Assembly (NCBI RefSeq): GCF_006345805.1 | Contig: NC_043017.1 | Coordinates: forward strand, 28,892,001-28,956,000 | Direction of reading: 5' to 3' | DNA length: 64,000 nucleotides | DNA from: Octopus sinensis | Taxonomy: Eukaryota | In this document: positions 4,521 through 50,790 of the stretch, one piece after another | How the letters are laid out: each line of letters opens with the position of its first letter | Position numbering within the stretch: position 1 is the stretch's first letter | Notes under the pieces: model-generated | The model's input: only the letters and a program-made list of their open reading frames with translations | What the model was told of the DNA's origin: nothing | Database searches by the model: none | Position numbers and translations under genes: made by a program

Positions 4521-4522
4521 TT

Positions 4523-4938
4523 ATTTCTTTATTGCCCACAAGGGGCTAAAAATAGATGGGACAAACAAGAACAGACAAAGGGATTAAGTAGATTAAATCG
4601 ACCCCAGTACATAACTGGTACTTAATTTATATACCCTGTGAGGATGAAAGGCAAATTCGACCTCAGCGGAATTTGAACTCAGAGTATAACGACAGACAAA
4701 ATACATATTTCTTTACTACCCACAAGAGGCTAAACACAGATGGGACGGACAAACACAGACAAACGGATTAAGTCGATTATATCGACACCAGTGCTTAACT
4801 GGTACTTATTTAATCGACCCCGAGAGGATGAAAGGCAAAGTCGACCTCGGCGGAATTTGAACTCACAACGTAACGCAGACGAAATACCGCAAAGCATTTC
4901 GCCCGGCGTGCTAACTTTTCTGCCACCTCGCCGCCTTG
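4523..4938 (-). mobile_element. Family B SINE, head plus two tandem ~180-bp units
   Basis: Head AAGGCGGCGAG.TGGCAG, unit repeated at 4523-4705 and 4706-4885. Confidence 0.85.
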
Positions 4939-9334: not shown

Positions 9335-9733
9335 AAGGCGGCGAGCTGGCAGAAGCGTTAGCACGCCGGGCGAAATGCTTAGCGGTATTTCCTCTGCCGC
9401 TACGTTCTGGGTTCAAATTTGTCTTTCATCCTTTCGGGGTTGAGTAATTAAGTACCAGTTACGCACTGGGGTTGATATAATCCACTTAATCCGTTTGTAT
9501 GTCCTTGTTTGTCCTCTCTGTGTTTAGCCCCTTGTGGGTAGTAAAGAAATAGATATTTCGTCTGCCGTTATGTTCTGAGTTGAAATTCCGCGAGGTCGAC
9601 TTTGCCTTTCATCCTTTCGGGGTCGATAAATTAAGTAGCAGTTACGCACTGGGGTCGATGTAATCGACTTAATCCCTTTGTCTGTCTTTGTTCGTCCCTT
9701 CTATGTTTAGCCCCTTGTGGGCAACAAAGAAAT
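9335..9733 (+). mobile_element. Family B SINE, head plus two tandem units
   Basis: Second unit restarts at ATATTTCGTCTG (9553) after AAGAAATAG. Confidence 0.85.
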
Positions 9734-9959
9734 AACAATTATTGAATTGAATATGATTTTTGATACGTTTTTTACGGGCACTTTGGAGTTCGTATTCGGT
9801 CGCGGTCAAATTTGATTACAATCCGCGATAGCTGAGAAATCATCGAGAAACATTCACCCACAAATACTGTTGATTTCTGTTCAAAGTAGAAAACAATATT
9901 GAAGACGATGCGTTGGACACATTATTTAGAGTGGCGAAAAAATTGCCTTGCTCTATTAG

Positions 9960-12949: not shown

Positions 12950-13068
12950 ATATATGTATGTATGTATGTTTGTATGTATGTATGTATGTATGTATGTATG
13001 TATGTATGTATGTGTGGATGGATCGATGAATGGATGGATTGATGTGTGTATTAATGTATATAAGTGTG

Positions 13069-13108
<40 letters not shown>

Positions 13109-13239
13109 GTGTGTGTGTGTGTGTGTTGTGTGTTTGTATACATACATAGAGAGAGAGACATAGATAGATAGATAGATAGATAGATAGACAAATATATATA
13201 TATATACATAGAGAGAGAGGCACACATAGATAGACAGAC

Positions 13240-13289
<50 letters not shown>

Positions 13290-13400
13290 AGTTGCTTATG
13301 TGCCCCTCTGTGTGTTTCTGTGTATGTGTATATGTATATGTGTGTGATGGTGCATGTATGTGTGTGTGTTTATGTGTGTGATTATGTGTGTGTGGGGGGG
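12950..13400. repeat. Compound microsatellite tract (TATG, TA, TG, GATA, GA)
   Basis: Seen directly. Confidence 0.9.
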
Positions 13401-14049
13401 GGGTTAGAACACACTCATACACACACGAATGGCTACTCGGCAGTCTCTGTGCTCGGACATTCATGTCCAATGTATCGTGGGACCCACATCTTCGAAACGT
13501 TACAGAAGGTGTTACGAAATGAGGTGCACGTGGTTGCAAAATTAGTCTCGAAACAACAGCTACGGTGGATACCAATTCCTTGTGCCCAAGATTTTCTAAC
13601 GTACTTGCAAGAGAGCTTTTGTCGGAAGCATACATTTACGATGCACATGTCATGAATAGTATACAGGTCCTGAATTATTGCCAATTATTCATTTCGCTCT
13701 CAACTGAAAATATCCATGATTTGAATGCTGTGATTCGGGTTTGTCAAAACTGGCATTTAAGGAGGTAATATTCAGGCCAGAGATGCTGATGAATGCGAAT
13801 AGAAATTCTCATAGAATCAATGATTTGAGTCTGATGTGGAATCGGTGTTGTGACATAGTTGCTGAAACGGGTGATTAGGGCTGTGTTGTTGTCGAGGAGA
13901 ACATTTAGGGGCCGGTCTCAGCAACTGTTATCTATTTCTACTATACTTTACAGGATGCTCTTTATGGCGATGCCGAATCCAAATTCAATCTCTCTGGGAT
14001 AATCAAATGATTGCTTTCACCAGTATTTGCATCTTCTTCTTTAGAAACA

Positions 14050-14112
<63 letters not shown>

Positions 14113-14113
<1 letters not shown>

Positions 14114-14326
14114 CTTTACTACCCACAAGGGGCTAAACACAGAGGGGACAGGCAAAGGGATTAAGTCGATTACATCGACCCCAGTGCGTAACTGGTACTT
14201 AATTTATCGACCCCGAAAGGATGAAAGGCAAAGTCGACCTCGGCGGAATTTGAACTCGGAACGCAACGACAGACGAAATACGGCTACGAATTTCGCCCGG
14301 CGTGCTAACGTTTCTACCAGCTCGCC
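14113..14326 (-). mobile_element. Family B SINE, single unit
   Basis: Close match to the other B copies. Confidence 0.85.
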
Positions 14327-15067: not shown

Positions 15068-15333
15068 TATATATATATAGGAATATTGTCATACGAAACT
15101 TATCGTGCATCCTATCACATAAAAAGTGAGACCAACTTCCGATAATCTCAAGAAAACGAATCAACTGTGGATCCTCAATATATGCACTGGATCTGCATCA
15201 AATCTCAGTATATTAAAATTTATTTGTGTCTACTAAAATACGTGTTAGACGCGTTCGGAGTGTTTAAAGGTTTTAAATGTAGAAACAGCTTCGATAGATA
15301 TCTTATGAAAAACTTACACTGAGAACTGGGAAG

Positions 15334-15713
15334 CACTGCGTCGGTTACGACGACGAGGGTTCCGGTTGATCCGAATCAACGGAACAGCCTGCTCGTGAAA
15401 TTAACGTGTAAGTGGCCGAGCACTCCACAGACACGTGCACCCTTAACGTAGTTCTCGGGGATATTCAGCGTGACACAAGAGAGTGACAAGGCCGGCCCCT
15501 TTCAAATACAGGTACAACAGAAACAGGAAGTAAGAGTGAGAGAAAGTTGTGGTGAAAGAGTACAGCAGGGATCACCACCATCCCCTGCCGGAGTCTCGTG
15601 GAGCTTTAGGTGTTTTCGCTCAATAAACACTCACAACGCCCGGTCTGGGAATCGAAACCGCGTTCCTACGACTGCGTGTCCGCTGCCCTAACCACTGGGC
15701 CATTGCGCCTCCA
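15334..15713 (-). mobile_element. Family A SINE
   Basis: Reverse complement of 120-494. Confidence 0.9.
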
Positions 15714-21454: not shown

Positions 21455-21514
21455 TTATAATATTTCCGCCTCAGCGAAGGCGGAGGTATTATTTTCGGTC
21501 ACGTTTGTTTGTTT
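21455..21514 (+). mobile_element. Helentron/HINE-like terminus
   Basis: Hairpin TCCGCCT-CAGCGA-AGGCGGA followed by TTTTCGGTCACGTTTGTTTGTTT. Confidence 0.5.
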
Positions 21515-22483
21515 GTTAGTTAGTTAGTTAGTTAGTTAATTTGGCTCAAAAGCAAATAGCAAGGCCATGTAGGGGGACATGGAGTTAAGTACAGGGTGGT
21601 GTTCATGTAAAGAGTTCAGGCCACTTGAGGTCCAGGGAGGCTTTGAACAAAGCGGTCGTCGGCATCTTCACCATCTCGTCTGGCAGCTTGTTCCACGGAT
21701 CCGCAACCCGGACGGAGAAAGCTCCTCTCCTTCGATTGAGATGAAATCGTCGCAGGTAGAGCTTTTCGGAATGAACCCGCAGCCGACGCTCCGGGGCAGG
21801 AGTGAAGAACAGCTCTTTCGAGAGGTTACACTTCCCGCTTATGATGTTGTGGGCGAGAATGAGATCACCACGGCGGCGGCGTTTTTCAAGAGAATAAAGG
21901 TCGAGCGTCCTCAGCCTTTCTTCGTAGGACAAATTTTTGAGACCATGAACCATGCGGGTAGCCAGCTTCTGGACTCTTTCGAGATGCTGTATGTCTTTGA
22001 GGAGATAAGGAGAAGAGGCTTGAATCCCATACTCCAATATGGGTCTCACCAGCGTGACATAGAGTGGCAGGAATATGGCTGCTGTGAGCATTCCGAATGA
22101 CCGTCGAATCAAAAACAGAATTCCGTGCGCTTTGTTGGCAGCATGGACGCACTGGGCCGAAGGCGAAAAGGAGGAATCCACCAAGATACCCAGGTCCTTT
22201 ACCTGATCGGTCCTCTCCAGCAGCAGACGACCCGGCTCGAAATCAAGTTGAGTTGCAGGAGGAGAGCCAACAGGCAGATGACAGCACTTTGACACGTTCA
22301 GACACAGGTCGCAATCGTTAGACCACTTCCAAATTTGGTGGAGGCATCGACGAATATCCTCTATACTACCGCGAGGAGCGACCAGTTTGATATCGTCGGC
22401 AAATAGAAGGGTGTGTTGCGTGAGGTCGTCGGGCAAGTCATTTATGAAGACTAAGAACAACAAGGGCCCAAGCACTGAACCTT
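21515..22483 (-). mobile_element. CR1-like LINE 3' part (RT C-terminal half, 3' UTR, (TAAC)n tail)
   Basis: Open frame GSVLGPLLFLVFIND...LFADD...LERVQKLATR...RRRRGDLI...WNKLP; tail (TAAC)n at 21515-21539. Confidence 0.92.
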
Positions 22484-22562
22484 CATTTTTTATGTTTTTA
22501 CGGCGACTGTATTGTATTGTATTGGCATCCTTTCTGTCTCGAGAGACAATGGAGTTGCGCAT
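21603..22562 (-). pseudogene. Fusion ORF: 27 codons of RTE 3'UTR/flank plus CR1 RT C-terminal half
   Basis: ORF track, 319 aa; CR1 homology starts at GSVLGP. Confidence 0.8.
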
Positions 22563-22703
22563 GAAGTAGTCTAGTCCGGCTTTTACATTTCATGTCCTGA
22601 TACATTTCCTGCTGTGGCTGTGTGGTCCTATCCTGGACAAACACTCCCTCTGGCAGGTACCGCAAATGTAGCGAAGACTGTTCCTGGCTGGTTGTAATGC
22701 CAT
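22480..22703. repeat. Left copy of 224-bp inverted duplication
   Basis: Reverse complement of 30336-30559; no mismatch found by eye. Confidence 0.95.
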
Positions 22704-23055
22704 AGTTTCTTGTTTTACATCTTTTCTTGTCTTTCCATTTCTCCTCTCTCTCTCTCTGTCACTCCTTTGTACTCCCTCTTTTACGGTACGCCGCCAGTCT
22801 CCACGGTTGCCGGCAACTGCTTCCCAACCGCTAATATTGATGTTGCAGGCCTTCATGTCCCTGTTGCAAACATCCTTGTAACGTAAGAACGGTCTACCCA
22901 CAGACCTAGTACCCCTAGCAAGCTCTCCGTAGAGTATGTCCTTGGGGATTCTGCCAACTTTCATACGGCTAACATGCCCAAGCCATCTCATACGTCTTTG
23001 CGTGAGGAGTGCAAACATGCTTGGTATTCCTGCTTGGCTTACTTTTGTGTTAGCT
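22508..23055 (-). mobile_element. RTE (BovB-like) LINE 3' fragment
   Basis: QAGIPSMFALLTQRRMRWLGHVSRM..GRIPKDILYGEL..GRP.LRYKDVC; C-terminal CxxC/H motif; (CAATA)n tail. Confidence 0.9.
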
Positions 23056-23954
23056 AACTTTGCACGCTCTTAAGTTGTCCGACTCGCTTCCTCTTGAGAC
23101 TCACGTTTTCGTCATGAAATCAGAAATCAGACACCACACTAACCGTTAGTATGTCCGTAACTCCGTCAACATCGTTTCCATTTCTGCAATCCCCATGCAT
23201 ATTTGCAGACGTCGTCATGTGACGTATCATGCAAAACAGTCACGGTAGCAACCTTGCTTTAACCAGACATGTTAATTATGAGAGCCATGGGCAACAAGCA
23301 CTCTCCCAGACATAGCAAACAGGAATTCATTTGCCTGTTGTTTGTCTTAAGCCTTTGATGTATTTCGCGAACTATTGTCGGTAAAGTTTTTCAATAAATT
23401 TGTATTATATTTATAACTTTTGTAAGTCTGGATTACACCATTGATCTCGCAAATTGAAGAAAACCAGCCGTGTCGGAATGTTTTTATTTTTTAAATTATT
23501 TTTACAGTTTCCAGTTCCATTAAACTTCGCGTAGTTATTTTCTTTTTATTACAAAACCAGTACAAAATATTTCTGTGAAGGTGAATATTCTCAATAAAGC
23601 GAAACTTGTTTTTCGTATCGAAGATTATATTTACACGAATTTATTCAGGAATTCGTCACCCAGATAAAACAGAAACATACATAAGATCATGTAAACACAC
23701 ACACACACATACACAAACAATGAATGAGGGGAAAAAGAAATTGGAATTCACGAGAAACTTTATACCTCACTACGATCGTTTCAACCCATCTTGCATCGGA
23801 GGATGCAACACAACCAGCTGTATACTCTCCCACCCGTAAGGGACAGAGATTTTCAAAGACATTTCGGTGGGGAGGAAAAATATACAGAAATATGGGCGGA
23901 GGAAATGTAACGTTATACAGTGTACTTAGGCAGCGATTTAATAGATTATTCAAA

Positions 23955-24632
23955 TACTGGGTTGTCCGGAAAGTTCGTGCCGATTTTTAAAGGAAAGAAA
24001 AAGGTCAATAAATAAATACTTGCCATTACATATTTAATCAGCCAAATATGAACCATTTTGTTGCACAATGATTCTCCCTCCATCTTTCCTTTTACTATAC
24101 CCTCTTCCCAGAATTGAGGTGGTTTCAGGGCAAAAAATTCATCAAGGTATCTTTTTACGTCATCCAATTAATTGAAATTTTTCCCATTAAGATTATTCTG
24201 CAGAAACCGAATAACTGGAAATCCGAAGGAGCAATATCTGGTGAATACAGAGGGTGGGGTAACACATACCAGTCGAGCTGCAGCAATTTTTCTCTGGTTC
24301 CCAAGGAAACGTGCGGTCTTGTATTATCATGTTGGAAAACAACACTCTTCCTGTTGGCCAATTCTGAACGTTCTCTTGAATTGCTGCTTTTAACTCGTTC
24401 AGTTGTGTGCAGTATTTATCACACTGGATTGTCTGTTTACTTGGGAGAAGCTCATAGTACGTAATTCCTTTCTATCCCACCAGACGCAAAGCAAGACTGA
24501 TTTAGGGTGAAAACCCACTTTGAGGGTGGCTATGGGTTGCTCATATCGTTACCCGAGGATCACTTTCTCTGAACATTTCGGTATATAATCCATTTCACGT
24601 CACCTGTCACAGTTTGCTTTAATAATTTTGAA
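23955..24632 (-). mobile_element. Mariner DD34D fragment: catalytic domain to 3' TIR
   Basis: TVTGDVKWI, HDNTRPH...YSPDIAPSD (34 residues between the two D), DDVKRYLDEFF; TIR TACTGGGTTGTCCGGAAAGTTCGTGCCGATTT. Confidence 0.92.
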
Positions 24633-24657
24633 ATTATTAAGTGGTCTATGCTTTTTG

Positions 24658-24830
24658 CATTGGGCTGTCACGAAAGTTCGTGCCGATTTATAGTAGCTTA
24701 ACTTTCGACTAATTTTAGAATATGGTTGAGTCTACAAAATAGGATTTGACTACATCTCCATTTAGAGCACAGTTTATGCTATCATGTCGTGGAAGAAGTT
24801 TTATGCCCCTTTAACCTGTGTTAACTCAAT
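24658..24830 (+). mobile_element. Second TIR of the same mariner family, probably the 5' end
   Basis: CATTGGGCTGTCACGAAAGTTCGTGCCGATTT in the same orientation as the TIR at 23955, with a different internal flank. Confidence 0.6.
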
Positions 24831-25453
24831 ATTAACTCAAGTTTATGAGTGGATGTGTGCTTTTAAAATTAGCCTGTTTTTTTCTTGTGGAATATATGTT
24901 CCAAGTCTTAAACATGCAGCATACAATTCTTCAATCTTAAGAGATTCAACTTAAAGAATTTCCCTCTCTCCAATATGTTATATTTCTTCTTGTTGATAAC
25001 TCAAAGATAGCTGGAGGTACATTTAAATCATTATATGCATTGTTTCTTCATGCATATATTCTTAGATAAGAGCGATCTATGTACATTCTATGTTTTACAA
25101 ATTTATCTATATACAAGGAAGCTTACGAAAACCTAAAATTTCTAGCGAAAAGCGATTAATGGCATCATGTACATACGTTATTTCACTTTTCTGCAAAATA
25201 GCGAATAATACCAACTAAAGAAAAATGGATCAAATTAAAACGTGTTGGCCAACTTTTTGAAGAATATCGGGACAAAACCATTGACGTTTAATTTATAATT
25301 ATTTGGCCGTAATATATCAAAGCCATGCTCTTCTTCACCGAAAATAGCCGGAAAACATTATTTTCTACCTATAATCCATGAACTGTCACACATACATACA
25401 CACATATTTTTTTTATGTTTGTGTCTGTGCGCGTGTGTGTCGCGTTTATATAT

Positions 25454-25535
25454 ATGTGACCGCGTGTGTACCGTTGGCGATATTTTCCCTCCGTCTTCCC
25501 TTCTCTGGATCTTTACTTTTCCTATGTTTCAAAAA
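25454..25535 (+). mobile_element. Truncated copy of the 2525 Penelope-like fragment
   Basis: TGTGTACCGTTGGC...TCTTCCCTTCTCTGGATCTTT...CCTATGTTTC shared; stops just before the hammerhead-like core. Confidence 0.6.
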
Positions 25536-25670
25536 ACGAAGAAATAATTCAGAATCCTTCCCTGTTTCAAATTAATATTATGAGACCTTCTAGTTTTCTC
25601 TTCTCTTAAATTCCGACCTTCCTTTAGTATTCCTGTTTTTTTTAGATCGATGTATAGAATTACGTATATA

Positions 25671-26052
25671 TCTTTATATATAAAAGTCAAGTTGTGTGTC
25701 TGTCTCCTACGATTTAGATTCCTAACTACTCCCACATTTTGCGGTGCAGTGTAACCAAAAGCGGGTATCTTATAGTCGTGATTCATATCGAGCCCTTCTG
25801 GGTATTAGCGCACGTCTACGATGAGTCTACGATTTTTAAAAAAATTACCATCAATTTTTCCCATTTTTTAATGCATTTTTTTTCTATTATATAAGAGAAG
25901 TAACTCTCTAAAAATGTATTATTAAATCTCAGAACGTAAAAAGCTACAGTAACACCCCTCTTTGTGGTTAGCCATATTGAGATGGCTATTATACTTTACA
26001 TCTCTAAAAATGCTTATATAGTTATTTCCCTTACAAACCCGAGCAACGCTAG
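25671..26052 (+). mobile_element. Non-autonomous Helitron (copy 1; 3' hairpin partly deleted)
   Basis: A|TC start, CTAG|T end; homologous to 42936-43324. Confidence 0.85.
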
Positions 26053-26129
26053 TATAAGTATATTGTAAAATGTTAATATGAATGTACAATATATAATATG
26101 AGAGAGATAATATAATATAAGGGAGATAA

Positions 26130-26325
26130 TCAGGAAAAAGATTTCAAAGAATTCAACTATAGCTAAGTAAATATAACAAAAAAATTAATACAGAATCCTT
26201 GTCCGGTATCGGATCGATCCTAAAATGTAAGTGGTTCGTGCTAGTCAGGAGACGAAACATCCCTGAATGTTTCAACATAATCCATGCAACGGTTCTTGAG
26301 ATATCTTGTGCACGGACAGACATAC
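26130..26325 (-). mobile_element. HINE/Helitron-like body fragment
   Basis: Minus strand GTATGTCTGTCCGTGCACAAGATATCTCAAGAACC...GGATCGATCCGATACCGGACAAGGATTC; pattern typical of HINE bodies. Confidence 0.45.
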
Positions 26326-27039
26326 CTTTTATTGCAATCGCATTATTAAACACGTGGAGAATAAGAAGAAAAAAAAAAGAAAAAGAAAAGAAAAAATACT
26401 ATTTATAGTTTCGCTCTCCTCGTACATGACTCTATTCACAAGTACTGTTTATAGTCGGCCCCTCCTTTGATTTTTCTCAAAGTCAAGGTCACTGTTTCAC
26501 AAGTTCCATCAACACTGTTGCGGCAATTTGAACTCTATTTGACCGACCGTTCTTCATCTCACTTTATGAGCTATTACTACTGCTGCTATCAGAATTTACT
26601 GCAGTTACTACTATCGCTACAATTAGAAACATTCAAGTTGACGATGACACCGAAATGTCTTTCTCCGTGTCTGAATTATACCGGTGGCACCAACGAAAAA
26701 TCCCTTTCTTTCTCTGTGCTGGGAGAAAAGAGAATTTACTATAAAAACAAACCCCCAGCCCTCCCTCCAACGTATAATTTACTTTAAAAAGAAATACTTT
26801 AAGAAGGAAAAACGTGAGAAAAAAAGAAAAATTAATAATATAATTTAATCAATAGACAAAAACATGTGCCTTCTCGCACATAAACACAGTATTCACACAT
26901 ATACAAACATGCGCAGATGCAATTATTGAAGTACTAAATGGCACGTCAAATGATATTTAATCGTGTGGAACATGTTACATGCATATCAATATTCTAAAGT
27001 TTGGACATACTATCCCTTATCCTAAAGCTGCTTCAGACA

Positions 27040-30000
27040 ATTAGGTAGGGTTCCCGACTCGTTGCACCGTCTGCTTTCAATCTTGGATTGTGATTCGGCT
27101 CAGCTCAAACTCTCTCAGATTTTGTCTGCTGTTGCCTACTCCTACAAGGATTGCACCTGTTTTTTGTTCCTGATTTAACGCCGATTTGTCCTAGAGCCCA
27201 TAGAAGATTGTTTTTAGTCAACCATCCATCATGTCAGCTACCTACGCATCGAAACTGAGATCTGCAAGTAGGGCTTCTCATCAAGATGATGGTCCTACCA
27301 ATAGTCAGCTCAACGAGCAGTTGCTGTTGCTCAAACAAGAGGTTGAGCACCTAAAGTCTGTTGTTGCTCTCTTACTGAATAAACAGTCTCCTGTTGACGC
27401 AGAGTCACCCTTGATTTCTTCCCTGGAGACGTCCAAACCGAAGGGAACAAAATCGAAGCGGCCAAAGAAGGCGAAGGAACCGGCGGTCGTTCCTACACAT
27501 GATCGTTCCTGTGCGGATTCTTCCTCATCTGCCTTTTCGGTCCCGGAGATTCCCCAACCTAGTTTGAGGAGCGTAGACTCAAACCCACCTGAAGACCGTT
27601 GTTCTCCCCAAAAGAAGAAACGTAGTGAAAACTCCAGAGGGGCAGATTTGGCTATGAAACCTGATCACGATAAAATCTGTTTGGATTCTCCTTCACTTGT
27701 CCTTCCCATTAATGCCATTGCTCAACCAATTCTGAACGATCTCGATGTGAGTTCATCTGGGCAGTGGTGCTCCCCCAAACCGAAGAAGAGGCAGTGCAGT
27801 TCCAAACCAGGCGGGAAAATTATGACCACTAAATCCATTCCGATCGACCCCACAGGCCGACATAAGTCCGATGGCTATGAAACCACCCTTTCGAAATCCT
27901 CCAATGAAGAATCGAATACCGCAGCTCATAGTAGAGAACTTTTTGCCCACTCGAGATCGGCAATAATATATGGCAAAGCTGAATCCACCTGTGATACAGG
28001 CATAAACCGCCTAAAAGATGACATTAATTTTGTTTCCATTTTGGTTGGAGAATAGTTCTCTGTGAACGAAAATGTCAGTGTTCTTAAGGTCGCTCGGCTA
28101 GGAAGATTCCAAGCGAACCCAACCGCAGATACTAGACCACGCCCAATAAGGGTAATCTTTTCTTCTGATCGGGAGGCTTCAGTCTTTCTGAACAGAGCTC
28201 AGACGCATGCCTGGGAGGACCCCAATATGGGTTTTCGCGAGGAATACTCACTAAGAGAGAGAATTCGCCGGAGGAACCTGATATCCGAGCTAAAGATGAG
28301 GAAACAAATGGGAGAGAAGGGTTTACGAATCCAAGATGGAGAGATAATCAAGTCCTACCTCTGGTCCCATGCTGTAGTGCTGACAGGGAAAGTGATGTGA
28401 GGGCAAATCGAAGTGAAGTTGATACCCCCGTCAACGATGCTATCTCTGATGCCCTTTATTCTGCTTGTTCCCCAACTCCCGCCCCTCAGACTTCACAGCT
28501 CAGCATCGTCTACACCAACTCGTGCTCCTTATTCCCAAAGTTCAGTGAACTATTTACACTGGCCATACGTGACTCCCCTGATGTGATAGCTATCACCGAG
28601 ACTTGGCTGACTCCAGCAGTAAAGGACTCAGAAATCCACCTGCAGGGCTACGTCCTTTTCAGATGTGACAGAGGAAAAAGGCGAGGTGGAGGTGTTGCTG
28701 TGTATGTTAAGTCTGAGCACAAACCGTCCTGCCGTATTCTACCCACAAATGCTCAACCTACAACCAAATTCGATGCCGTCTATTGCAAGCTGAGCCTATC
28801 TGAGTTTTGCCTGCCCGTGTTGGCTGTCTACAGGCCGCCTCTAGCCGACCCCCAGGACGATGCTCATCTACTCGAAGCGATAAGATTCGTTTCAGCTTCG
28901 CATGACTGCTTGCTACTAGGCGACTTCAACGTTCCCACGATCGGTTGGCCCGCATCAATTTGTACAACATCTTCCCGGTTCGGCCAGGCCCTTCTTGACG
29001 TGGCTGAAGATTGTTTTCTATCGCAACATGTTGAATATCCGACAAGGCATCGGTCTGGGCAGCAGCCATCTATGCTAGATCTGGTATTCTCCCGCTATCC
29101 AAGATCAGTGTCAGACGTATCTGTGTACGCCCCTCTTGCCAAGAGTGATCATGCGGTCCTGAAGTTCGTCATGCACACAACTTTTTCCACGCCCACGATT
29201 ACTTCGCTGCCACGTAGAGTCTTCTCTGCAATTAATCTTGAAATTCTAACCGAGGCTTCCGCGCTTCTGGACTGGCGATCCCTGATGACGTTGTCCTCAG
29301 TTGACGAACTATGGTCATCCCTCAAAGCATATGTAATCTGTTTGACTGACCAGGCAGTTCCCGTTGGGCTTCCCAAGAGGAAGAAACACAAGCCCTGGGT
29401 GACGAAGAAGGTTAAACGAGAACGTCGACTCAGAGATATTGCTTGGGCTGAATTCAAAAATCTGGATTCGACTGCAGCTTTTGAGGTGTACAAAACTCAA
29501 CGAGACCGAGCCGTGAAAATTAAAAAGAAAATCGCGGCAAATGCCAGTAGCAATCCAAAAACCTTCTTTGCCCATGTCCAGCGGAATTCCCGCTTGAACA
29601 ACCAGATTGCAACGTTGGTAGACTCAACAGGCGTATCGATTGAGGACCCTTATCAACAGAGTCAATTATTTGCCGAGGCTTTTTCAACTATTTTCAAACA
29701 AGATGATGGTCGTGAACCCCCTCCATTTGATAGATCGGTACCTCCAATGCTTCGATTGATCATCACGCTGGACGAAGTCAAACGTGTTATTCAAGGCCTC
29801 GATGTCAACAAGGGTCACGTCCCTGACGGCATACACCCACGGGTTATCAAAGCGTTGGCTCCGGTCATCTGCGAGCCCTTAACACGACTATTCAATATGT
29901 CATTGGCGACGGGTGTTATACCTGCAGACTGGAGAACAGCGATAATCTGCCCAATTTTCAAGAAAGGGAGCCGCGAAGACCCGCTTAACTACCGACCGGT

Positions 30001-30340
30001 TTCCCTTACATCAATAATCAGCAAGATGTTCGAAACCATCCTTAAGAAAAGTATGATGCTCCACCTCCTAAACACAGCCTCGATCACTGATTCCCAACAC
30101 GGCTTCGTGCCGAAGAGATCATGCTTGACCAACTTACTAGTAATGGAAGAATTGGTGACGCGCATCCTCGATGATAGTGATGCTGTTGACATCGTTTTAT
30201 TGGACTTTGCCAAAGCTTTTGACTCGGTAAACCACCGCCTACTACTTGTCAAGCTTCAAGTATATAGTTTCCATCCGGATATTGTACGATGGGTTGGTGC
30301 CTTCCTCTCAGATCGCTCCTTCCAAGTTCAAGTTAATGGC
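27040..30340 (+). mobile_element. CR1-like LINE 5' part (5' UTR, ORF1, ORF2 to mid-RT)
   Basis: GC-richer block with two long ORFs; 5' boundary approximate. Confidence 0.9.
27231..28400 (+). pseudogene. LINE ORF1 (about 389 codons) with one in-frame TAG at 28053-28055
   Basis: ORFs 27231-28055 and 28062-28400 share a frame; C-terminal RPRPIRVIF...ERIRRRNLISELKMRKQMGEKGLRIQDGEII typical of CR1/L2/Jockey-type ORF1. Confidence 0.8.
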
Positions 30341-30541
30341 ATTACAACCAGCCAGGAACAGTCTTCGCTACATTTGCGGTACCTGCCAGAGGGAGTGTTT
30401 GTCCAGGATAGGACCACACAGCCACAGCAGGAAATGTATCAGGACATGAAATGTAAAAGCCGGACTAGACTACTTCATGCGCAACTCCATTGTCTCTCGA
30501 GACAGAAAGGATGCCAATACAATACAATACAGTCGCCGTAA
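28397..30541 (+). CDS. LINE ORF2, APE endonuclease plus N-terminal RT, fused to out-of-frame RTE sequence after 30340
   Basis: YTNSCSL, ITETWL, RGGGVAVYV, LGDFNVP, LDLVF, SDH; NYRPVSLTS, QHGF, DFAKAFDSVNH; ends FQVQVNG at the breakpoint. Confidence 0.9.
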   Translation: MRANRSEVDTPVNDAISDALYSACSPTPAPQTSQLSIVYTNSCSLFPKFSELFTLAIRDSPDVIAITETWLTPAVKDSEIHLQGYVLFRCDRGKRRGGGVAVYVKSEHKPSCRILPTNAQPTTKFDAVYCKLSLSEFCLPVLAVYRPPLADPQDDAHLLEAIRFVSASHDCLLLGDFNVPTIGWPASICTTSSRFGQALLDVAEDCFLSQHVEYPTRHRSGQQPSMLDLVFSRYPRSVSDVSVYAPLAKSDHAVLKFVMHTTFSTPTITSLPRRVFSAINLEILTEASALLDWRSLMTLSSVDELWSSLKAYVICLTDQAVPVGLPKRKKHKPWVTKKVKRERRLRDIAWAEFKNLDSTAAFEVYKTQRDRAVKIKKKIAANASSNPKTFFAHVQRNSRLNNQIATLVDSTGVSIEDPYQQSQLFAEAFSTIFKQDDGREPPPFDRSVPPMLRLIITLDEVKRVIQGLDVNKGHVPDGIHPRVIKALAPVICEPLTRLFNMSLATGVIPADWRTAIICPIFKKGSREDPLNYRPVSLTSIISKMFETILKKSMMLHLLNTASITDSQHGFVPKRSCLTNLLVMEELVTRILDDSDAVDIVLLDFAKAFDSVNHRLLLVKLQVYSFHPDIVRWVGAFLSDRSFQVQVNGITTSQEQSSLHLRYLPEGVFVQDRTTQPQQEMYQDMKCKSRTRLLHAQLHCLSRQKGCQYNTIQSP

Positions 30542-30559
30542 AAACATAAAAAATGAAGG
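30336..30559. repeat. Right copy of 224-bp inverted duplication (RTE 3' end, tail and ~28 bp of flank)
   Basis: Identical peptide MALQPARNSLRYICGTCQRECLSRIGPHSHSRKCIRT in both ORF-track entries. Confidence 0.95.
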
Positions 30560-30649
30560 GAGCATGCTTGAAATCCAGAGTTTAGTATTGTTTGTTAGGG
30601 CCTCTATTTTCATCTATAGTTGCTTATATCCTTAGACGCGTTTTTAATT

Positions 30650-31150
30650 AAACATATGTTCAGCAGTGATTTCATTTCAAATGTAGAAGTTCTCAATCGA
30701 GGGCTCTACCTAATCTTCGAAAACTCTGGAAAATTGTTGTAGGAAGCATTGTCTTGTTATTAAACACGATGGTCACTCATTGAAATGTAAGCTTTGGTAA
30801 GTTAAAGCATCGGCTATAAGCGATTCTCCGTGATTGAGAAGTTTAAACCTTGAAGCGATCACGATTATTCTAATTTCTTCCTGTTCGTGATTTTTGTTCT
30901 GTTGTGCAATAATATTTTGCATGTGAGGTGATAGGCTTTAAGCTGTTCAAAGAGACTTGACTGTTATAATTCAAAAGAGCATATTACTGAGGTCTGCTTT
31001 CAGGGAATCTATGTAGAGTTGGTAGGAAGTGTCTGACCTGGAAAGCAAATGTATGTAAAGAATGAAGAACGGTAACATCTAAAGATAAGTGGATGTTGTT
31101 AGAAATGCTATCCAATAGATAAAGATTTTCGTAAAAGAACAGCTTAGCGG
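30650..31150 (-). mobile_element. Possible very decayed Tc1-like transposase remnant
   Basis: Only scattered motifs on the minus strand (QDNASY, SIENF). Confidence 0.25.
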
Positions 31151-31415
31151 CACACTGCGTATCATAGGGATCTCAGTCAGTTCAAGCTGATCCAGTATTA
31201 TTTGGAATGAATCCATTAATTCAGAGAAAGTTTCAGTTATTTACAACACGGCAATAGGTGTTCAAATTATATTTGGATGACTAATCGCAATGGTTCATCG
31301 GTTGAACATGCATGAGTAAATTCTGAATGAAAGTATAGCCCACAATTTAATCAATAACGTATTCTCCATAATTTCACTACGTCCCACCGTACTATGTTAT
31401 TATTATATATGGGTG

Positions 31416-31796
31416 TGGAGGTGCAATGGCCCAGTGGTTAGGGCAGCGGACTCGCGGTCATAGGATCGCGGTTTCGATTCCCAGACCGGGCGTTGTGAGC
31501 GTTTTATTGAGCGAAAACACCTAAAAGCTCCACGAGGCTCCGGCAGGGGAGGGTGGTGATCCCTGCTGTACTCTTTCACCACAACTTTCTCTCACTCTTA
31601 CTTCCTGTTTCTGTTGTACCTGTATTTCAAAGGGCCGGCCTTGTCACTCTCTGTGCCACGCTGAATATCCCCGAGAACTACGTTAAGGGTGCACGTGTCT
31701 GTGGAGTGCTCCGTCACTTACACGTTAATTTCTCGAGCAGGCTGTTCCGTTGATTCGGATCAACCGGAACCCTCATCGTCGTAACCGACGGAGTGC
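31416..31796 (+). mobile_element. Family A SINE
   Basis: Near-identical to 120-494. Confidence 0.9.
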
Positions 31797-32663
31797 TAAA
31801 GGAAGGATTTATGGGTATACTTTTCTACGAGATGAGCTTGACATTTTGTGTGCTATACTTCGATCATAAGAAATATTTTTTTTTTAATAATTTGTTCCAT
31901 TCATTTCTTCGGGATATCTCGACTGCAAGCCTCGCGTACTATTTAAACACACATTCGCGTGCACACACACACGCACGAGCGCGCACACAGGCGCGGATGC
32001 ACACACACATCGTGATGAGGATGCGGGTGTTGCTGCTGTTGTTGTTGTTGTTGTTGGTGTTAAGCAACAAGACAGGTAAAGGTGATTAGGTGATGATCTA
32101 TTGCTTAGGAGCGGGAGACAGCGGACCTTGGAAAAAATACTTTGGTCGTCTTGTTGTTGTCGAGGGCCCTTCGTTGACGCCCGACACCATTGGGAGGTGG
32201 CCCTCGAAGTCACTGGAAATGGAGATCTCCAGGTCCAAATACTTGGACGGCTGCTGCTGCAGGTGATGATGATGATGATGATGACGACGACAACGGCGGC
32301 GGTGAAATGTGTGTTACAACAAAAAATGGGTTACACCAAAGAATGGGTTACGTCATTCATTAGAATAGAAACGAAAACCTAAAAACATAGAATCTGTTAA
32401 TATATCACTGATTTGTATCACATCTCACTTTACAATGTAGAAGGTCTTTATTCACATGGGTCTCAATATTCTGTCAACTGATGATCTGCTTATAAAGCAA
32501 GCAAAGATTTGTGTTCTCAGTTTAACCCCTTATATGAAAATCTGTACAGTCCTTACAAAGATAGTTTTGTATGTGTGGTAATAAAACATTAAGAACATTA
32601 TATATATTATAACATTAAGAACATTATATATATTATAACATTATATATATATATATTATATTG

Positions 32664-34380: not shown

Positions 34381-34469
<89 letters not shown>

Positions 34470-34670
34470 TACATATGAGTGTGTGTATGCTAGATGGGTC
34501 TAAACAATTGTGGAGATTAATAGAACTTATCGTATCTTCCATCTTCCGTCTTTTATTAACCAAATACACACACACACACCTATATATATGCATTTATATA
34601 TGTAAATTATATATACATGTATATATATATATATTATATATCTGTCTTTCTATTTATCTATATACACACA

Positions 34671-34737
<67 letters not shown>

Positions 34738-35056
34738 AAATAGTGTTACAGATAGAAACACCCACAACTTCATCCACTCCAAACGATATTAACTCAACCA
34801 AACCATAAAATATTAAATAATATACTTACTATTTATATTTATAATTGCAAAATTTTCCATATTGCGGACTACACGCGTTTTATGAGGATACGTGTAGAAT
34901 TGTTAAGACACAAAATCTCATTCAAAAGCTCATAATGTTTACGCGCTTCCAATCGTCAGGTCTACTTTCCGCACATTTATAAATATTACTACTCTTTATA
35001 AATCACACAGTTATAATATATTATAACACAACCACACACCCAACCACACCCACACC

Positions 35057-36195: not shown

Positions 36196-36428
36196 AAGGC
36201 AGCGAGCTGGCAGAAACGTTAGCACGCCGGGCGAAGTGCGTAACCGTACTTCGTCTGCCGCAAAGTTCTGAGTTCAAATTCCGCCGAGGTTGACATTGCC
36301 TTTCATCCTTTCGGGGTCGATAAATTAAGTACCAGTTATGCACTGGAGTCGATGTAATCGACTTAATCCGTTTGCCTGTCCTTGTTTGTCCTCTCTGTGT
36401 TTAGCCCCTTGTGGCTAGTAAAGAAATA
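36196..36428 (+). mobile_element. Family B SINE, single unit
   Basis: Close match to the other B copies. Confidence 0.9.
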
Positions 36429-37128
36429 GATATATAAATATTGGTGTGTGTGTGTGTCTGTATATGTTAGAATATATGACTGTGAATGATTATTTCTGTC
36501 TCTGCGTGTTTCTATATATATGTGTGTACGATTTTTCCTTGAGTTGAATTCAGATTCTTTATGAAAGTGTTTATAAATATGTGCTTGAGTTGGTATGTTG
36601 GTTGAACTCTTGATGCATACACCCAAGCATTGTGCATGTATACATCACAGAAGCCTTTCACATTAGGAGTGTTTATAATACCTTTAAAAGTTTCAGTGCC
36701 TCCAATAGATTGGACATGGAGAATCCGCGTCACGTTCGTTTGCTGTTCTTTTTCCGCGAAGCCAAATATTTCTAGGTTTTTGTGACATAAACTTGTGATC
36801 CTATGATTATAGGTCAAATAACAATTCGTAGTCAGGGTACAAGAGCAGTTAGTTCCGCAGTAATTCGTCATAAATGTTCCCTGTTTTGTGGACATTCGGT
36901 TGTACATTCATATTTAGGGGGTAGCTGACTTCTACAACAAGGAATGACATTTGTTCCCTGTTCTACAGAACACTATCAGATCTGTTATGTATGTATGTAC
37001 GCATATATCTATGCATTTATGTATGTATGTACGCATCTATGTACGTACGTACGTACGTATGTATGTACGTATGTACGTACGTATGTATGTACGTATGTAC
37101 GTATGTATGGATGCACCTATGTATGTAT

Positions 37129-37436
37129 GTCTATCCTTGTTTGTCCTCTCTGTGTTTAGCCCCTTGGGTGTAGTAAAGAAATGTATATACACACATACAT
37201 ACGTAGGAACGTACATACATACATATGTACGTACATACATATGTATGTACGTACATATGTATGTATGTACGTACATGTGTATGTATGTACGTTCCTACGT
37301 ATGTATGTGTGTATATACATATGTATGTATGTACGTACATATATATGTATGTACGGTTCTACGTATGTATGTGTGTATATACATTTCTTTACTACACACA
37401 AGGGGCTAAACACAGAGAGGACAAACAAGGATAGAC
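37129..37436. repeat. ~90-bp foldback inverted repeat of SINE tail plus flank
   Basis: 37129-37218 versus about 37347-37436, about 3 mismatches. Confidence 0.8.
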
Positions 37437-37612
37437 AAACGGATTAAGTCGATTACATCGACCCCAGTGCGTAACTGGTACTTATTTAATCGACCCCGAA
37501 AGGATGAAAGGCAAAGTCTACCTCGGCGGAATTTGAACTCAGAACGTAGCGGCAGACGAAATACTGCTAAGCATTTCGCCCGGCGTGCTAACGGTTCTGC
37601 CAACTCGCCGCC
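37383..37612 (-). mobile_element. Family B SINE
   Basis: Close match to the other B copies. Confidence 0.9.
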
Positions 37613-38089
37613 CTTGCGTATATATTTGTGTATATATTTATGTATGTATGTATGTATATATTTATATTGCTTTGCTATTCGTAGGCTTCCACTTTTGCGA
37701 ATTCAACCTAAAGTAATCTCGAGGCGAGCGCCATCTTCATTTAACTTGCACGTAACTTACATTCAAGCGCATTAGTTTCTTGTATAATTGTATTGTGAAA
37801 CATCTTGCTTCCATTGTGTATTAGAAAGTATTTTACCTAGATACATTTACTTGATAGCATATGCAGAAAATGTGTAACGAGATATATGTTCAGTTAAGAT
37901 AACTATGATAAAAATTAGTTCGCAAATTGCTGCTATGCTGATATAGTAGTGAACGAGTTGTATTGTTCATGTACCTGCTCATTGATACAGTCATTAATTT
38001 TCTCCTGCTTGTACTGAAAGCTTCCTTCTCTCAAAGTCGATATCTTTTTTTTCATTTTCATGTGATTACTAGAATATGTATAGCATATA

Positions 38090-38499
38090 GTGACTGTGTG
38101 GTAAGTAGCTTGCTAACCAACCACATGGTTCCGGGTTCAGTCACACTGCGTGGCATCTTGGGCAAGTGTCTTCTGCTATAGCCCCGGGCCGACCAATGCC
38201 TTGTGAGTGGATTTGGTAGACGGAAACTGAAAGAAGCTTGTCGTATATATGTATGTATATATATATATATATGTGTATGTGTGTGTGTGTTTGTGTGTCT
38301 GTGTTTGTCCCCCTAGCATTGCTTGACAACCGATGCTGGTGTGTTTACGTCCCCATCACTTAGCGGTTCGGCAAAAGAGACCGATAGAATAAGTACCGGG
38401 CTTACAAAAGAATAAGTCCCGGGGTCGATTTGCTCGACTAAAGGCGGTGCTCCAGCATGGCCGCAGTCAGATGACTGAAAGAAGTAAAAGGGTAAAGAG
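38090..38499 (+). mobile_element. Family D SINE
   Basis: Almost full-length match. Confidence 0.9.
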
Positions 38500-40016: not shown

Positions 40017-42040
40017 AGACATATATCGTATAGATATACATATAGATTTACATATATTGTATAGATATACATATAGATTTACATATATCGTATAGATATA
40101 CATATAGATATACATATAGATTTATAGACTTGTTTGTAGGCTGTGCAATATATTTCCGAACATTATATATAGCCGTTGATAAAATAAAAATACGTATGTA
40201 TAGTCATGTATAATATAGTTATACTTATATACATATACATACATAGATATATCTGTAGACTGTGCATATTTGAGTTCATTTATACGATATATAGGAATAT
40301 ATAAGGACCCACAAAATTATTGCATTAAAACTTTTCTAGATTTCGTTTTCTCTATGATTCAAGCAGTATCTGGAAAAAACGATTGCTTGGGTAAGATAAA
40401 TATCTTACAATCACATACTTTGAAAGCAATAAGTTTCAGTATTCTCGGTAGTAACCTACATTTCTAAGTTTCCATTCAAACATCCTCATTTTCTTATTTT
40501 ATCTACCTTGTCTTATTAAGCAATGATTGGGGTTTGGACTTAAGCGTTAAGTAGCACCTATATATGGAGCGTTTTTTTTTTTGGCAATGCAAATATGGAA
40601 AAGATTTCTACCGATGCTGTTGTAATATTTCTTCAATGTATACGTTGATAAAACGATTTTTAATACAATTATCTATCAGGTAAGTGTAGCTTTTCGGAAG
40701 ACTGTTGCAATCGGCTTGGACTTTATTCAGAAAGACACATTAATTTGTTTCGAAATAGACCGTTAACGATGCCGTTGTTAGAATAATGTAATTAAGTGTA
40801 GAGAAATGGGCTCTCATTTCTTGTACTGGAATTAAAATGATAAATGGATTTTGCAGAGTTTTACAACATGAGTAACTTATCTTAATCGTATTTCTATTAA
40901 GAAGATTATGACGTCTACGAGTTATCAGAAATCACGAAGAGATTTAGTTAAAGTAAACTCGAACAATGTCAATGCGGTCATTTATTATATATACTGGATT
41001 TTACAACACATTTCTTATTCTTCTATTACACACTGGTAATCAGGGTAGGCATTGTATAATATTCAAGCTATGAATGCATGAATAAAGTTTTAACTTTAAT
41101 ATGGATTCACTAATGAGTGAATCCTTAAGAGAATTTTATGAATCTTTATTTGTATAATATAGAATTTCATTTGATTTCCTGTAGGAATAGAATATATTCG
41201 TAAATTATGCTATAGTTATAACCAAAATAATTAACATTTTTCAGAGCTTTATTACCTTATGTTGCTAAATGAATTTATATGTTCGTTTTGAAATCTACCA
41301 AACCCGCGACCATCTTATGTAACAATGTCTTTTAGACTCTCGACCCATTATAATTTGAAAGGGGGATATGCATGCACCCGAGTTACGGAGTTAATATTGA
41401 GTCCACACATACGCACAGACACACACAAACACATACACATACACAAACAAACAAATGAACAGACAAGCAGACAAGCATACACGCGCACATAGGTGAGCAT
41501 CTAAGTGCAAAACAAAGTGGGGGAAATAGTATTCGAATATCAAAGGCAGAGTAATACGCATTTATCAAGGCTGAACATATTAAATAGTTACCCGGAATTT
41601 CTACCTAAGAAATTTTGTATTCATATATTCAACCCAGTGCACACCGACCATAACTCATAAATATAACGAAAGCAAATCACCGTCTTCTTCACATTATTTT
41701 TCCTTCTTAATTTTGTTTATTTCGAATCTAAATATCATACCCGTTACACATATCAAATTATTAAATATTATTCCTTTTAATAAATAATCTTTAAATAAGA
41801 ACCTCGGCATGTTTTTCTCCTACTTCCTATTTTATAAGTATTATTAATAACACCCGCATTTTGTTGTTAAATATCTACCATTAACTTACAAAACATAATA
41901 TTCTATCTGTAGTTTAGACACCTATTTCAACCTGAATGTATATCCATAAACCTTATCCACTATTCTTTTACTATTTTTCTTTACTATAGACACCTAGCGT
42001 ATATGTGTTAGCTGCTTTAGTTATATACGTATTTATATAT

Positions 42041-42271
42041 ATTTCTTTACTACCCACAAGGGGCTAAACACAGAGAGGACAAACAAGGATAGACAAACGG
42101 ATTAAGTCGATTACATCGACCCCAGTGCGTAACTGGTACTTAATTTATCGACCCCGAAAGGATGAAAGGCAAAGTCGACCTCGGCGGAATTTGAACTCAG
42201 AACGTAACGGCAGACGAAAAACGGCCACGCATTTCGTCCGGCGTGCTAACGTTTCTGCCAGCTCGCCGCCT
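42041..42271 (-). mobile_element. Family B SINE
   Basis: Close match; TATACGTATTTATATA on both flanks (possible TSD). Confidence 0.9.
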
Positions 42272-48880: not shown

Positions 48881-48924
<44 letters not shown>

Positions 48925-50604: not shown

Positions 50605-50640
<36 letters not shown>

Positions 50641-50735: not shown

Positions 50736-50736
50736 G

Positions 50737-50790
<54 letters not shown>

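What the first reader, a model, noticed from the sequence alone, without database searches (positions are those of the whole stretch)
21515..30559. Recent ~8-kb inversion that cut a young CR1 LINE in two and left a perfect 224-bp inverted duplication at both breakpoints
Seen: CR1 ORF2 on + stops at FQVQVNG (30340). The missing RT half resumes on the - strand 8 kb upstream at GSVLGP (22483). Segments 22480-22703 and 30336-30559 are exact reverse complements by eye. The duplicated unit holds an RTE 3' end, its (CAATA)n tail and ~28 bp of post-tail flank, so it is a copied genomic segment rather than two independent RTE insertions. The right junction has 5 bp of microhomology (ATGGC, shared by CR1 and RTE). 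The left probably has 4 bp (AAGG, if the CR1 read the consensus CAAGG, QG). About 13 codons of the CR1 (up to GVPQ) appear lost. Known: inverted duplications at inversion breakpoints are the signature of staggered-break or microhomology-mediated template-switch repair, as opposed to ectopic recombination between repeats. Inference: flipping 22704-30335 makes the CR1 collinear, and zero divergence implies a very recent, possibly polymorphic event.
Basis: partly seen in the sequence, partly recalled or inferred. Interest (0 to 1): 0.85.

Follow-up and report, generated by a model that had tools for sequence, protein, structure and literature searches.

The report
Small inversion splitting an octopus LINE
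In an octopus genome, a stretch of about 7.9 kb has most likely been flipped, cutting a young CR1 retrotransposon in two and leaving an exact 224-bp copy of the far breakpoint at each end; this is a clean but ordinary example of a known way inversions form.

Summary
Bases 22480-22703 and 30336-30559 are exact reverse complements (224/224), and the unit occurs nowhere else in the window.

A CR1-type ORF2 runs on the + strand to ...FQVQVNG (30340). It resumes on the - strand at GSVLGP (22481). Both pieces share the same nearest relative.

The duplicated unit is the last 196 bp of an RTE-like LINE, its (CAATA)3 tail and about 28 bp that relatives indicate is flank, not element. In the left arm the RTE continues for another ~360 bp into the interior. 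So each arm has one ancestral and one novel junction, which is the signature of an inversion with a breakpoint duplication rather than recombination between two insertions.

The best explanation is a single non-homologous inversion of a pre-existing CR1, by staggered break or template switch. Not excluded:
- a templated inverted insertion followed by a flip between the arms;
- a CR1 twin-priming event coupled to the inversion;
- an assembly error.

"Very recent" is bounded only to under about 0.7% divergence per arm, and polymorphism is untested. A same-family CR1 copy on an Octopus vulgaris chromosome places the window in an octopus. This is a known kind of event: a tidy specimen of modest interest.

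The parts
21503..21538 (-). CR1 3' microsatellite tail, (TAAC)n/(AAAC)n read on the - strand
   Evidence: TRF reports (GTTA)9 at 21503-21538; sequence
21539..22479 (-). CR1 3' part: 3' UTR plus the ORF2 C-terminal 292 codons (21606-22481), starting at GSVLGP
   Evidence: RVT_1 profile 122-193. Aligns to residues 584-866 of P0308. 96.4% nt identity to a CR1 copy on O. vulgaris chromosome OX597823.1
22480..22703 (-). Left arm of the inverted duplication: about 28 bp of flank, the (CAATA)3 tail and the last 196 bp of the RTE-like element, which reads on the - strand. Outer junction 22479|22480 is novel; inner junction 22703|22704 is ancestral
   Evidence: Exact reverse complement of 30336-30559. 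The tblastn alignment of RTE relatives runs unbroken across 22703/22704
22704..23060 (-). Remainder of the same 5'-truncated RTE-like copy (about 560 bp in total), open reading frame with no stops
   Evidence: tblastn of P0121-P0137 covers 23060/23042 to 22602; ORF
23061..27040 (.). Non-LINE interior DNA carried along in the inverted segment. It includes a mariner-type transposase remnant at 24196-24548 (-). The right limit (the CR1 5' end) is not defined precisely
   Evidence: Pfam Transposase_1 hits, E=5e-8 and 4.5e-4. Base composition changes at about 27040
27041..30335 (+). CR1 5' part: putative 5' UTR, ORF1 (27231-28400, one in-frame TAG at 28053-28055), and ORF2 endonuclease plus the N-terminal RT half (28397-30340), ending at ..FQVQVNG
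   Evidence: Exo_endo_phos and RVT_1 profile 4-107; alignment A1; ORF1 translation
30336..30559 (+). Right arm of the inverted duplication: the last 196 bp of the RTE, the (CAATA)3 tail and about 28 bp of flank, reading on the + strand. Inner junction 30335|30336 is novel; outer junction 30559|30560 is presumed ancestral
   Evidence: tblastn hits to the RTE C-terminal zinc-knuckle region at 30369-30437
30560..31400 (.). Flank E, unique sequence that continues from the 28-bp post-tail segment
   Evidence: No other copy in the window or in L011

Best explanation
A full-length, young CR1-type LINE once lay intact on the - strand. Its 3' tail was at about 21503 and its 5' end pointed right. Some 4 kb to its right, on the + strand, lay a 5'-truncated RTE-like copy followed by unique flank.

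One rearrangement then inverted the segment running from a break inside the CR1 RT domain to a break about 28 bp past the RTE tail. That segment is now 22480-30335 (7,856 bp).

At the right-hand site the two strands were cut, or the template was switched, 224 bp apart. Those 224 bp therefore ended up at both ends of the inversion in opposite orientation. At the CR1 site, 42 bp (14 codons) were lost. The ends were joined without long homology, probably through 2-5 bp of microhomology. Possible routes are staggered single-strand breaks with fill-in and end joining (the Ranz et al. 2007 model) or two microhomology-mediated template switches during replication.

Shown: the exact inverted duplication; the collinearity of the CR1 halves once the segment is flipped back; one old and one new junction per arm.

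Inferred: the ancestral order, the repair pathway and the microhomology lengths.

No function is implied. It is a neutral structural change in repeat-rich DNA that killed one CR1 copy.
For: - The arms are 224/224 identical and present only twice in the window.
- The CR1 pieces cover RVT_1 positions 4-107 and 122-193. They abut residues 569 and 584 of the same nearest relative, P0308. They rank 74 relatives alike, rho 0.87, with a modal gap of 14 residues.
- The RTE runs unbroken through 22703/22704, so the left arm's inner junction is ancestral. The right arm's inner junction joins CR1 to the RTE at ATGGC.
- In independent relatives of the RTE, similarity ends 3-10 nt after the conserved hairpin+GGAYGCCAA. 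The 28 bp shared by both arms is therefore flank, and the arms are a DNA-level copy.
- The two copies are 7.6 kb apart in a genome that I recall being gigabase-sized. This fits a local DNA event, not retrotransposition.
- Two mutually consistent junctions make a balanced structure.
- Precedent: 17 of 29 Drosophila inversions carry such duplications, most at one breakpoint only, with a median of 321 bp (PMC1885836).
- Young CR1 and RTE families are documented in O. vulgaris (PMC13282606).
Against: - No reads, second haplotype or sister-species locus could be examined, so the ancestral arrangement is inferred and assembly error is not excluded.
- No target-site duplication tying the two CR1 ends to a single insertion was found.
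- No same-family CR1 or RTE DNA covering the junctions was available. The microhomology lengths and the exact RTE 3' end rest on relatives that are only 50-60% identical.
- Two other routes give the identical sequence (see rivals).
Confidence: 0.65

Rival explanations
1. Templated inverted insertion followed by a flip. A break in the intact CR1 was repaired by copying 224 bp from the RTE end 7.6 kb away, in inverted orientation, replacing 42 bp (a microhomology-mediated template switch). That gives the order CR1 3' half - arm - CR1 5' half - interior - arm. Recombination between the two identical arms, or an orientation error in the assembly, then flipped the interior to give the order seen.
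For: Flipping 22704-30335 between identical arms reproduces exactly the same four junction sequences. This follows from the sequence. Probable microhomology at both novel junctions fits template switching. The arms are exact, so they are good recombination substrates.
Against: It needs two events where one suffices. As assembled, each arm has one old and one new junction, which is the direct product of an inversion, not of an insertion. A 224-bp repeat is short enough that most sequencing reads or read pairs would resolve the orientation.
Confidence: 0.1
2. Retrotransposition-coupled inversion (twin priming across two breaks). The CR1 was never intact at this locus. One CR1 RNA was reverse-transcribed from two DNA 3' ends: from its tail at the target nick (21503 side) up to GSVLGP, and from an internal site (AUGGC), primed by the broken RTE end, up to the RNA 5' end. 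The roughly 4.5-kb fragment between the two breaks was rejoined in inverted orientation, bridged by the two cDNAs.
For: The layout has the hallmarks of twin priming. The two LINE segments are in opposite orientation. Their coordinates are 42 nt apart. The 3' segment ends in the tail. The 5' segment is joined to a genomic end through probable microhomology. A preprint reports L1-induced genomic inversions and twin-priming cDNAs sitting at separate breakpoints in cell models and cancers (10.1101/2024.12.14.628481).
Against: It requires a second, 224-nt staggered break 4.5 kb from the target site and four coordinated priming or joining steps. The same features (a small loss, microhomology) follow just as naturally from cutting a pre-existing element. 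No germline or non-mammalian precedent was retrieved.
Confidence: 0.08
3. Assembly artefact: a chimeric join or mis-orientation produced a structure that does not exist in the animal.
For: No read-level data were available. Exact look-ups of six window ORFs, including the two that read across the novel junctions, found nothing in the public protein collection, so there is no independent support for the junctions.
Against: Two independent junctions fit together into one balanced rearrangement with a precise 224-bp duplication and a 42-bp loss. Random chimeras give single, unbalanced joins. There are no N gaps in the window.
Confidence: 0.1
4. Two independent insertions of the same RTE-like element, one of them into the CR1, followed by ectopic recombination between the two inverted copies. 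A variant has the second copy arising by retrotransposition of a read-through transcript that carried the 28 bp as a 3' transduction.
For: In the flipped arrangement the 224-bp unit sits in the CR1 in sense orientation, as a 5'-truncated LINE insertion with a small target deletion would. Microhomology at LINE junctions is usual.
Against: The shared 28 bp lies beyond the point where all independent relatives of this RTE stop resembling one another. No new tail follows the 28 bp. A retrotransposed copy landing within 8 kb of its source in a genome that I recall being gigabase-sized would be a rare coincidence (order 1e-5). It also needs at least two events.
Confidence: 0.03

Closest known systems
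Inversions with inverted duplications of breakpoint sequence (staggered-break model; Drosophila melanogaster group, Ranz et al. 2007, PMC1885836)
   Same: An inverted duplication of otherwise non-repeated breakpoint sequence flanks the inverted segment. [quoted passage not shown] Its size (224 bp) falls within their range of 46 bp to 1.9 kb. There is no pre-existing inverted repeat pair.
   Different: This inversion is far smaller (7.9 kb against chromosomal scale). The host is a cephalopod. The arms have zero divergence, against about 88% identity in the flies. The second breakpoint can be read to the base because it lies in a coding LINE. The ancestral state was not observed here.
Twin priming / 5'-inverted LINE-1 insertions (Ostertag and Kazazian 2001, as cited) and L1-induced genomic inversions (10.1101/2024.12.14.628481)
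   Same: Two parts of one LINE lie in opposite orientation. A few tens of nucleotides are missing between them. The junctions probably carry microhomology.
   Different: The two parts are separated by 4.5 kb of non-LINE genomic DNA and are flanked by a 224-bp inverted genomic duplication. In classical twin priming the two parts are adjacent and the insertion is flanked by direct target-site duplications.
Inversions by ectopic (non-allelic homologous) recombination between inverted transposon copies
   Same: Identical inverted repeats containing transposon sequence sit at both ends of the inverted segment.
   Different: The repeat includes about 28 bp of non-element flank. One arm is a fragment that starts at an arbitrary point in an element which continues uninterrupted in the other arm. 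Flipping the segment back restores a CR1, not two intact RTE insertions.
Replication-based template switching (FoSTeS/MMBIR) rearrangements
   Same: A local inverted copy, short probable microhomology at both joins, and a small deletion at one join.
   Different: Nothing here separates this route from break-and-join. No extra templated insertions or multiple switches are visible.

Membership tests
Inversion with breakpoint inverted duplication (non-homologous origin) | Two copies of a breakpoint segment, in inverted orientation, flank the inverted DNA | tested here: met
   224/224 exact reverse complements at 22480-22703 and 30336-30559
Inversion with breakpoint inverted duplication (non-homologous origin) | Each copy keeps one ancestral junction and has one novel junction | tested here: met
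   The RTE is continuous across 22703/22704. The CR1-to-unit joins at 22479|22480 and 30335|30336 are novel. That 30559|30560 is ancestral is presumed
Inversion with breakpoint inverted duplication (non-homologous origin) | A sequence split by a breakpoint becomes collinear when the segment is flipped back | tested here: met
   The CR1 ORF2 halves abut residues 569 and 584 of P0308, a 14-residue gap; concordant ranking of 74 relatives
Inversion with breakpoint inverted duplication (non-homologous origin) | The duplicated segment was single-copy before the event and is not two independent repeat insertions | tested here: inconclusive
   The 28 bp beyond the tail lies outside the conserved 3' end of all independent relatives. 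No same-family copies were available. A strict pattern scan found none
Inversion with breakpoint inverted duplication (non-homologous origin) | The ancestral (uninverted) arrangement is seen in another haplotype, individual or species | not testable with these tools
   No octopus assemblies or reads are searchable by DNA. The only octopus locus reached (L011) is a paralogous CR1 fragment
CR1-clade non-LTR retrotransposon | ORF2 with an AP-type endonuclease followed by reverse transcriptase; the closest named relatives are CR1-type | tested here: met
   Exo_endo_phos, Exo_endo_phos_2 and RVT_1. The named hits are avian reverse-transcriptase proteins; that these are CR1-type is my recollection. 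No repeat library was available for formal clade assignment
CR1-clade non-LTR retrotransposon | 3' end made of a short tandem repeat rather than poly(A) | tested here: met
   (TAAC)n/(AAAC)n at 21503-21538
RTE-clade non-LTR retrotransposon | Clade-level assignment of the 560-bp fragment | not testable with these tools
   No Pfam hit for the C-terminal 159 aa and the relatives are unnamed. The 'RTE' label rests on recalled C-terminal motifs. What is shown: it is the 3' end of a mobile element, with a conserved hairpin+GCCAA+short-repeat terminus found in unrelated contigs

The most novel reading that the evidence does not exclude
The CR1 was never intact here. A single CR1 retrotransposition event, with twin priming from two separate DNA ends, both created and bridged the 7.9-kb inversion. 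That would be a natural germline example, in a cephalopod, of a LINE directly causing a genomic inversion with a breakpoint duplication.
Probability: 0.08. Interest if true: 0.65.

Novelty: new member of a known kind. Interest (0 to 1): 0.3.

Why it matters
Most inversion breakpoints are studied long after the event, when the junctions have decayed. Here both junctions can be read to the base. One lies in a coding LINE, which fixes the loss at 42 bp. The other carries an undiverged 224-bp duplication. That makes this a good specimen for asking how inversions form without repeat-mediated recombination, in a lineage (coleoid cephalopods) noted for genome reshuffling and active LINEs.

If the locus is polymorphic it would also give a simple PCR marker. 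The identical arms could allow the segment to flip back and forth. On its own, though, it confirms a known mechanism rather than revealing a new one, and it lies in repeat-rich DNA with no visible gene.

Tried and rejected
- Target-site duplications. I searched for shared words of 6-14 nt between the sequence after the CR1 tail and the sequence before the CR1 5' end, and for shared words of 8-12 nt between the RTE post-tail sequence and the sequence upstream of its truncation point. None were found. This is uninformative, because the CR1 5' end is not defined.
- Same-family RTE copies. A strict 29-nt pattern that included the (CAATA) tail gave 0 hits in metagenome and viral contigs. A looser pattern gave 7 loci holding only distant relatives.
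- Apparent conservation after the tail in L004, L008 and L010. This first suggested the element extends further. It runs to the contig ends and is absent from independent copies L005 and L007, so I read those contigs as orthologous or nested loci.
- Same-family CR1 DNA across the break. The only close copy, on O. vulgaris OX597823.1 (96.4% nt identity), is 5'-truncated 311 bp short of the break. An exhaustive protein search reached only 58% identity.
- Independent support for the junctions. Exact look-up of six window ORFs in 15 billion proteins found none.
- Rfam. There were no hits in the window.
- Rejected idea: the two CR1 pieces are unrelated fragments, one a 5'-truncated copy and the other a CR1-RTE chimeric retrocopy. 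That needs their end points to coincide within 42 nt of a roughly 4.4-kb element (about 2% by chance). It also needs the same 224 bp, including non-element flank, beside both.
Full report
**Observation**

The claimed inverted duplication is real. The repeat finder reports arms 22469-22703 and 30336-30570 at 98%. A direct comparison shows that 22480-22703 equals the reverse complement of 30336-30559 at all 224 positions. Identity ends abruptly on both sides, and the unit has no third copy in the 64-kb window.

On the + strand an ORF from 28397 carries Exo_endo_phos domains and RVT_1 profile positions 4-107. It leaves CR1-like sequence after ...FQVQVNG at 30340. On the - strand an ORF carries RVT_1 positions 122-193 from GSVLGP (codon 22481-22479) down to a stop at 21603-21605. 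That ORF is followed by a (TAAC)n/(AAAC)n tail at 21538-21503.

**Are the two CR1 pieces one element?**

In an alignment with six full-length relatives, the first piece ends and the second begins 14 columns apart (xxSxxxxVxSGVPQ). Over 74 full-length relatives the modal gap is 14 residues. The two pieces rank the relatives concordantly, with Spearman 0.87.

An exhaustive search found a closer relative, P0308. It is the best match to both pieces: 48% identity ending at its residue 569, and 54% starting at residue 584. Across the gap it reads FRVQVNG-SLSMEADVSSGVPQ-GSVLGP. So 42 bp, not about 39, are missing. The terminal N-G and the following G are genuine CR1 residues.

Both pieces are open for 648 and 292 codons. 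ORF1 (27231-28400) has a single in-frame TAG. The 3' piece is 96.4% identical in DNA to a 5'-truncated copy on Octopus vulgaris chromosome OX597823.1, and the window's SINE-like families occur at that locus too. The window is therefore from an octopus, and the CR1 belongs to a young family. This agrees with the 13 recently active CR1 families reported for O. vulgaris (PMC13282606).

**What is the 224-bp unit?**

Read in its own sense, it contains four things:
- the last 23-35 codons of an ORF whose relatives are 50-61% identical;
- a 3' UTR with a perfect 14-nt palindrome (TGTCTCTCGAGACA);
- the motif GGATGCCAA, followed by (CAATA)3;
- about 28 bp more, TCGCCGTAAAAACATAAAAAATGAAGG.

Ten relatives' 3' ends from unrelated contigs share the hairpin and GGAYGCCAA, then diverge within 3-10 nt into unrelated sequence. 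Independent copies L005 and L007 lose similarity to L010 exactly 3 nt after GCCAA. The longer downstream similarity among L004, L008 and L010 runs to the contig ends and is best read as orthology or nesting.

Hence the element ends at the short repeat, and the 28 bp is most likely genomic flank. The caveat is that these relatives are distant and no same-family copy was found. The label "RTE" itself could not be tested with these tools.

**Anatomy of the junctions**

In the left arm the RTE-like reading frame continues without a break across 22703/22704, up to about 23060. The left copy is therefore part of a roughly 560-bp 5'-truncated insertion, and its inner junction is ancestral. The right copy begins abruptly at ATGGC, directly after CR1 codon AAT/GGC, and continues on its outer side into unique flank. 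The left copy's outer end (..GAAGG) is joined directly to CR1 at TTCAGTGC.

Each arm thus has one old and one new junction. Writing the present order as A D' C' B' D E:
- A = CR1 3' part
- D = the 224-bp unit
- C = the rest of the RTE plus about 4 kb
- B = CR1 5' part
- E = flank

Flipping D'C'B' back gives A B C D E: an intact CR1 on the - strand and one RTE end followed by its flank.

**Mechanism**

This is the pattern described for most Drosophila inversions: inverted duplications of breakpoint sequence, usually at only one breakpoint, with a median of 321 bp. It is explained there by staggered breaks with fill-in and end joining (PMC1885836). Two microhomology-mediated template switches during replication would give the same product.

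The microhomology is only partly verifiable:
- At the left junction, the GG of the invariant Gly codon is shared for certain. AAGG is shared if the Gln codon was CAA.
- At the right junction, between 1 and 5 bp (ATGGC) are shared, depending on the third codon positions of Asn and Gly.

By my own rough calculation for random blunt joins, 4 bp or more at a junction has a probability of about 1.6% (not a tool result). If confirmed, the two junctions together would argue for microhomology-mediated repair.

**Rivals**

1. Templated insertion plus flip. Because the arms are identical, flipping the interior leaves all four junction sequences unchanged. The same sequence could therefore arise from a 224-bp templated inverted insertion into the CR1, followed by recombination between the arms or by an orientation error. 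This needs two steps.

2. Twin priming coupled to the inversion. The two CR1 parts have the geometry of twin priming: opposite orientation, 42 nt apart, and the 5' part joined to a genomic end at a probable microhomology. L1-induced breaks are reported to produce genomic inversions, with twin-primed cDNAs at separate breakpoints (preprint 10.1101/2024.12.14.628481). A CR1 insertion coupled to the inversion would yield the identical sequence. It differs only in predicting that no allele with an intact CR1 ever existed.

3. Two independent RTE insertions plus ectopic recombination. This is disfavoured by the shared non-element 28 bp, by the lack of a new tail after it, and by the improbability of a retrotransposed copy landing within 8 kb of its source.

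4. Assembly artefact. It cannot be excluded without reads, but two junctions that complement each other into one balanced rearrangement are not what chimeric joins produce.

**Age**

Zero differences in 224 bp give a 95% upper bound of about 0.67% divergence per arm. Gene conversion between the arms could also keep them identical. The open CR1 frames bound divergence to under about 2.9% from substitutions alone. "Recent" is fair. "Very recent" and "polymorphic" are untested.

**Verdict**

It is a clean, probably young instance of a known class of inversion, in repeat-rich octopus DNA with no gene in view. It is of modest interest, mainly as a well-preserved specimen. There is a small chance that it records a retrotransposition-coupled inversion.

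Noticed in passing
window 24196-24548 (- strand): Frameshifted remnant of a mariner-type transposase (Pfam Transposase_1, E=5e-8 and 4.5e-4) inside the inverted segment.
   Followed up: partly
window, e.g. 120-500, 15329-15713, 31416-31797; 3573-3998, 38089-38494, 48720-49138, 54174-54562; and ~230-bp units at 4372-4937, 9334-9738, 14104-14326, 36196-36433, 37377-37612, 42035-42271, 57807-58103, 62981-63303: At least three SINE-like repeat families, with 6-15 copies each at 72-95% identity. Copies of the second family (3573-3998 and its relatives) also occur in the O. vulgaris locus L011 at 87-90%. No Rfam family matches.
   Followed up: partly
window 59600-61100, also 13051-13635, 34382-34792, 36951-37409, 50452-51033: Long compound microsatellites (ATGT/ATAC/TATC-type) that produce spurious ORFs of up to 401 aa on both strands.
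   Followed up: no
window 28053-28055: CR1 ORF1 (27231-28400) has a single in-frame TAG. ORF1 ends at 28400, overlapping the start of the ORF2 frame at 28397. ORF1 has no Pfam match.
   Followed up: partly
protein P0186 / locus L011 9925-10569: The 94%-identical CR1 fragment is encoded on O. vulgaris chromosome OX597823.1, but its source name carries the locus tag 'llap_6084'. That prefix looks, from memory, like locus tags of the bird Limosa lapponica, a species that also appears among the hits. This hints at a mislabelled or contaminant record.
   Followed up: no
protein P0211: A protein annotated in the pipefish Stigmatopora argus is 65% identical to the octopus CR1 C-terminal half over 53% of it. 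The other named vertebrate hits in the same list are 40-44%. It could reflect horizontal transfer or contamination.
   Followed up: no
loci L004, L008/L009, L010 (JGI metagenome contigs): These contigs share not only the RTE-like 3' end but hundreds of bases of downstream sequence at 76-92% identity. L008 and L009 are identical. They look like host-genome contigs from related organisms within metagenomes.
   Followed up: partly
window 22531-22544 and 30495-30508: A perfect 14-nt palindrome TGTCTCTCGAGACA in the RTE-like 3' UTR. The same hairpin position holds a near-identical sequence in all ten relatives' 3' ends, so it may be the 3' recognition hairpin of this LINE lineage.
   Followed up: partly
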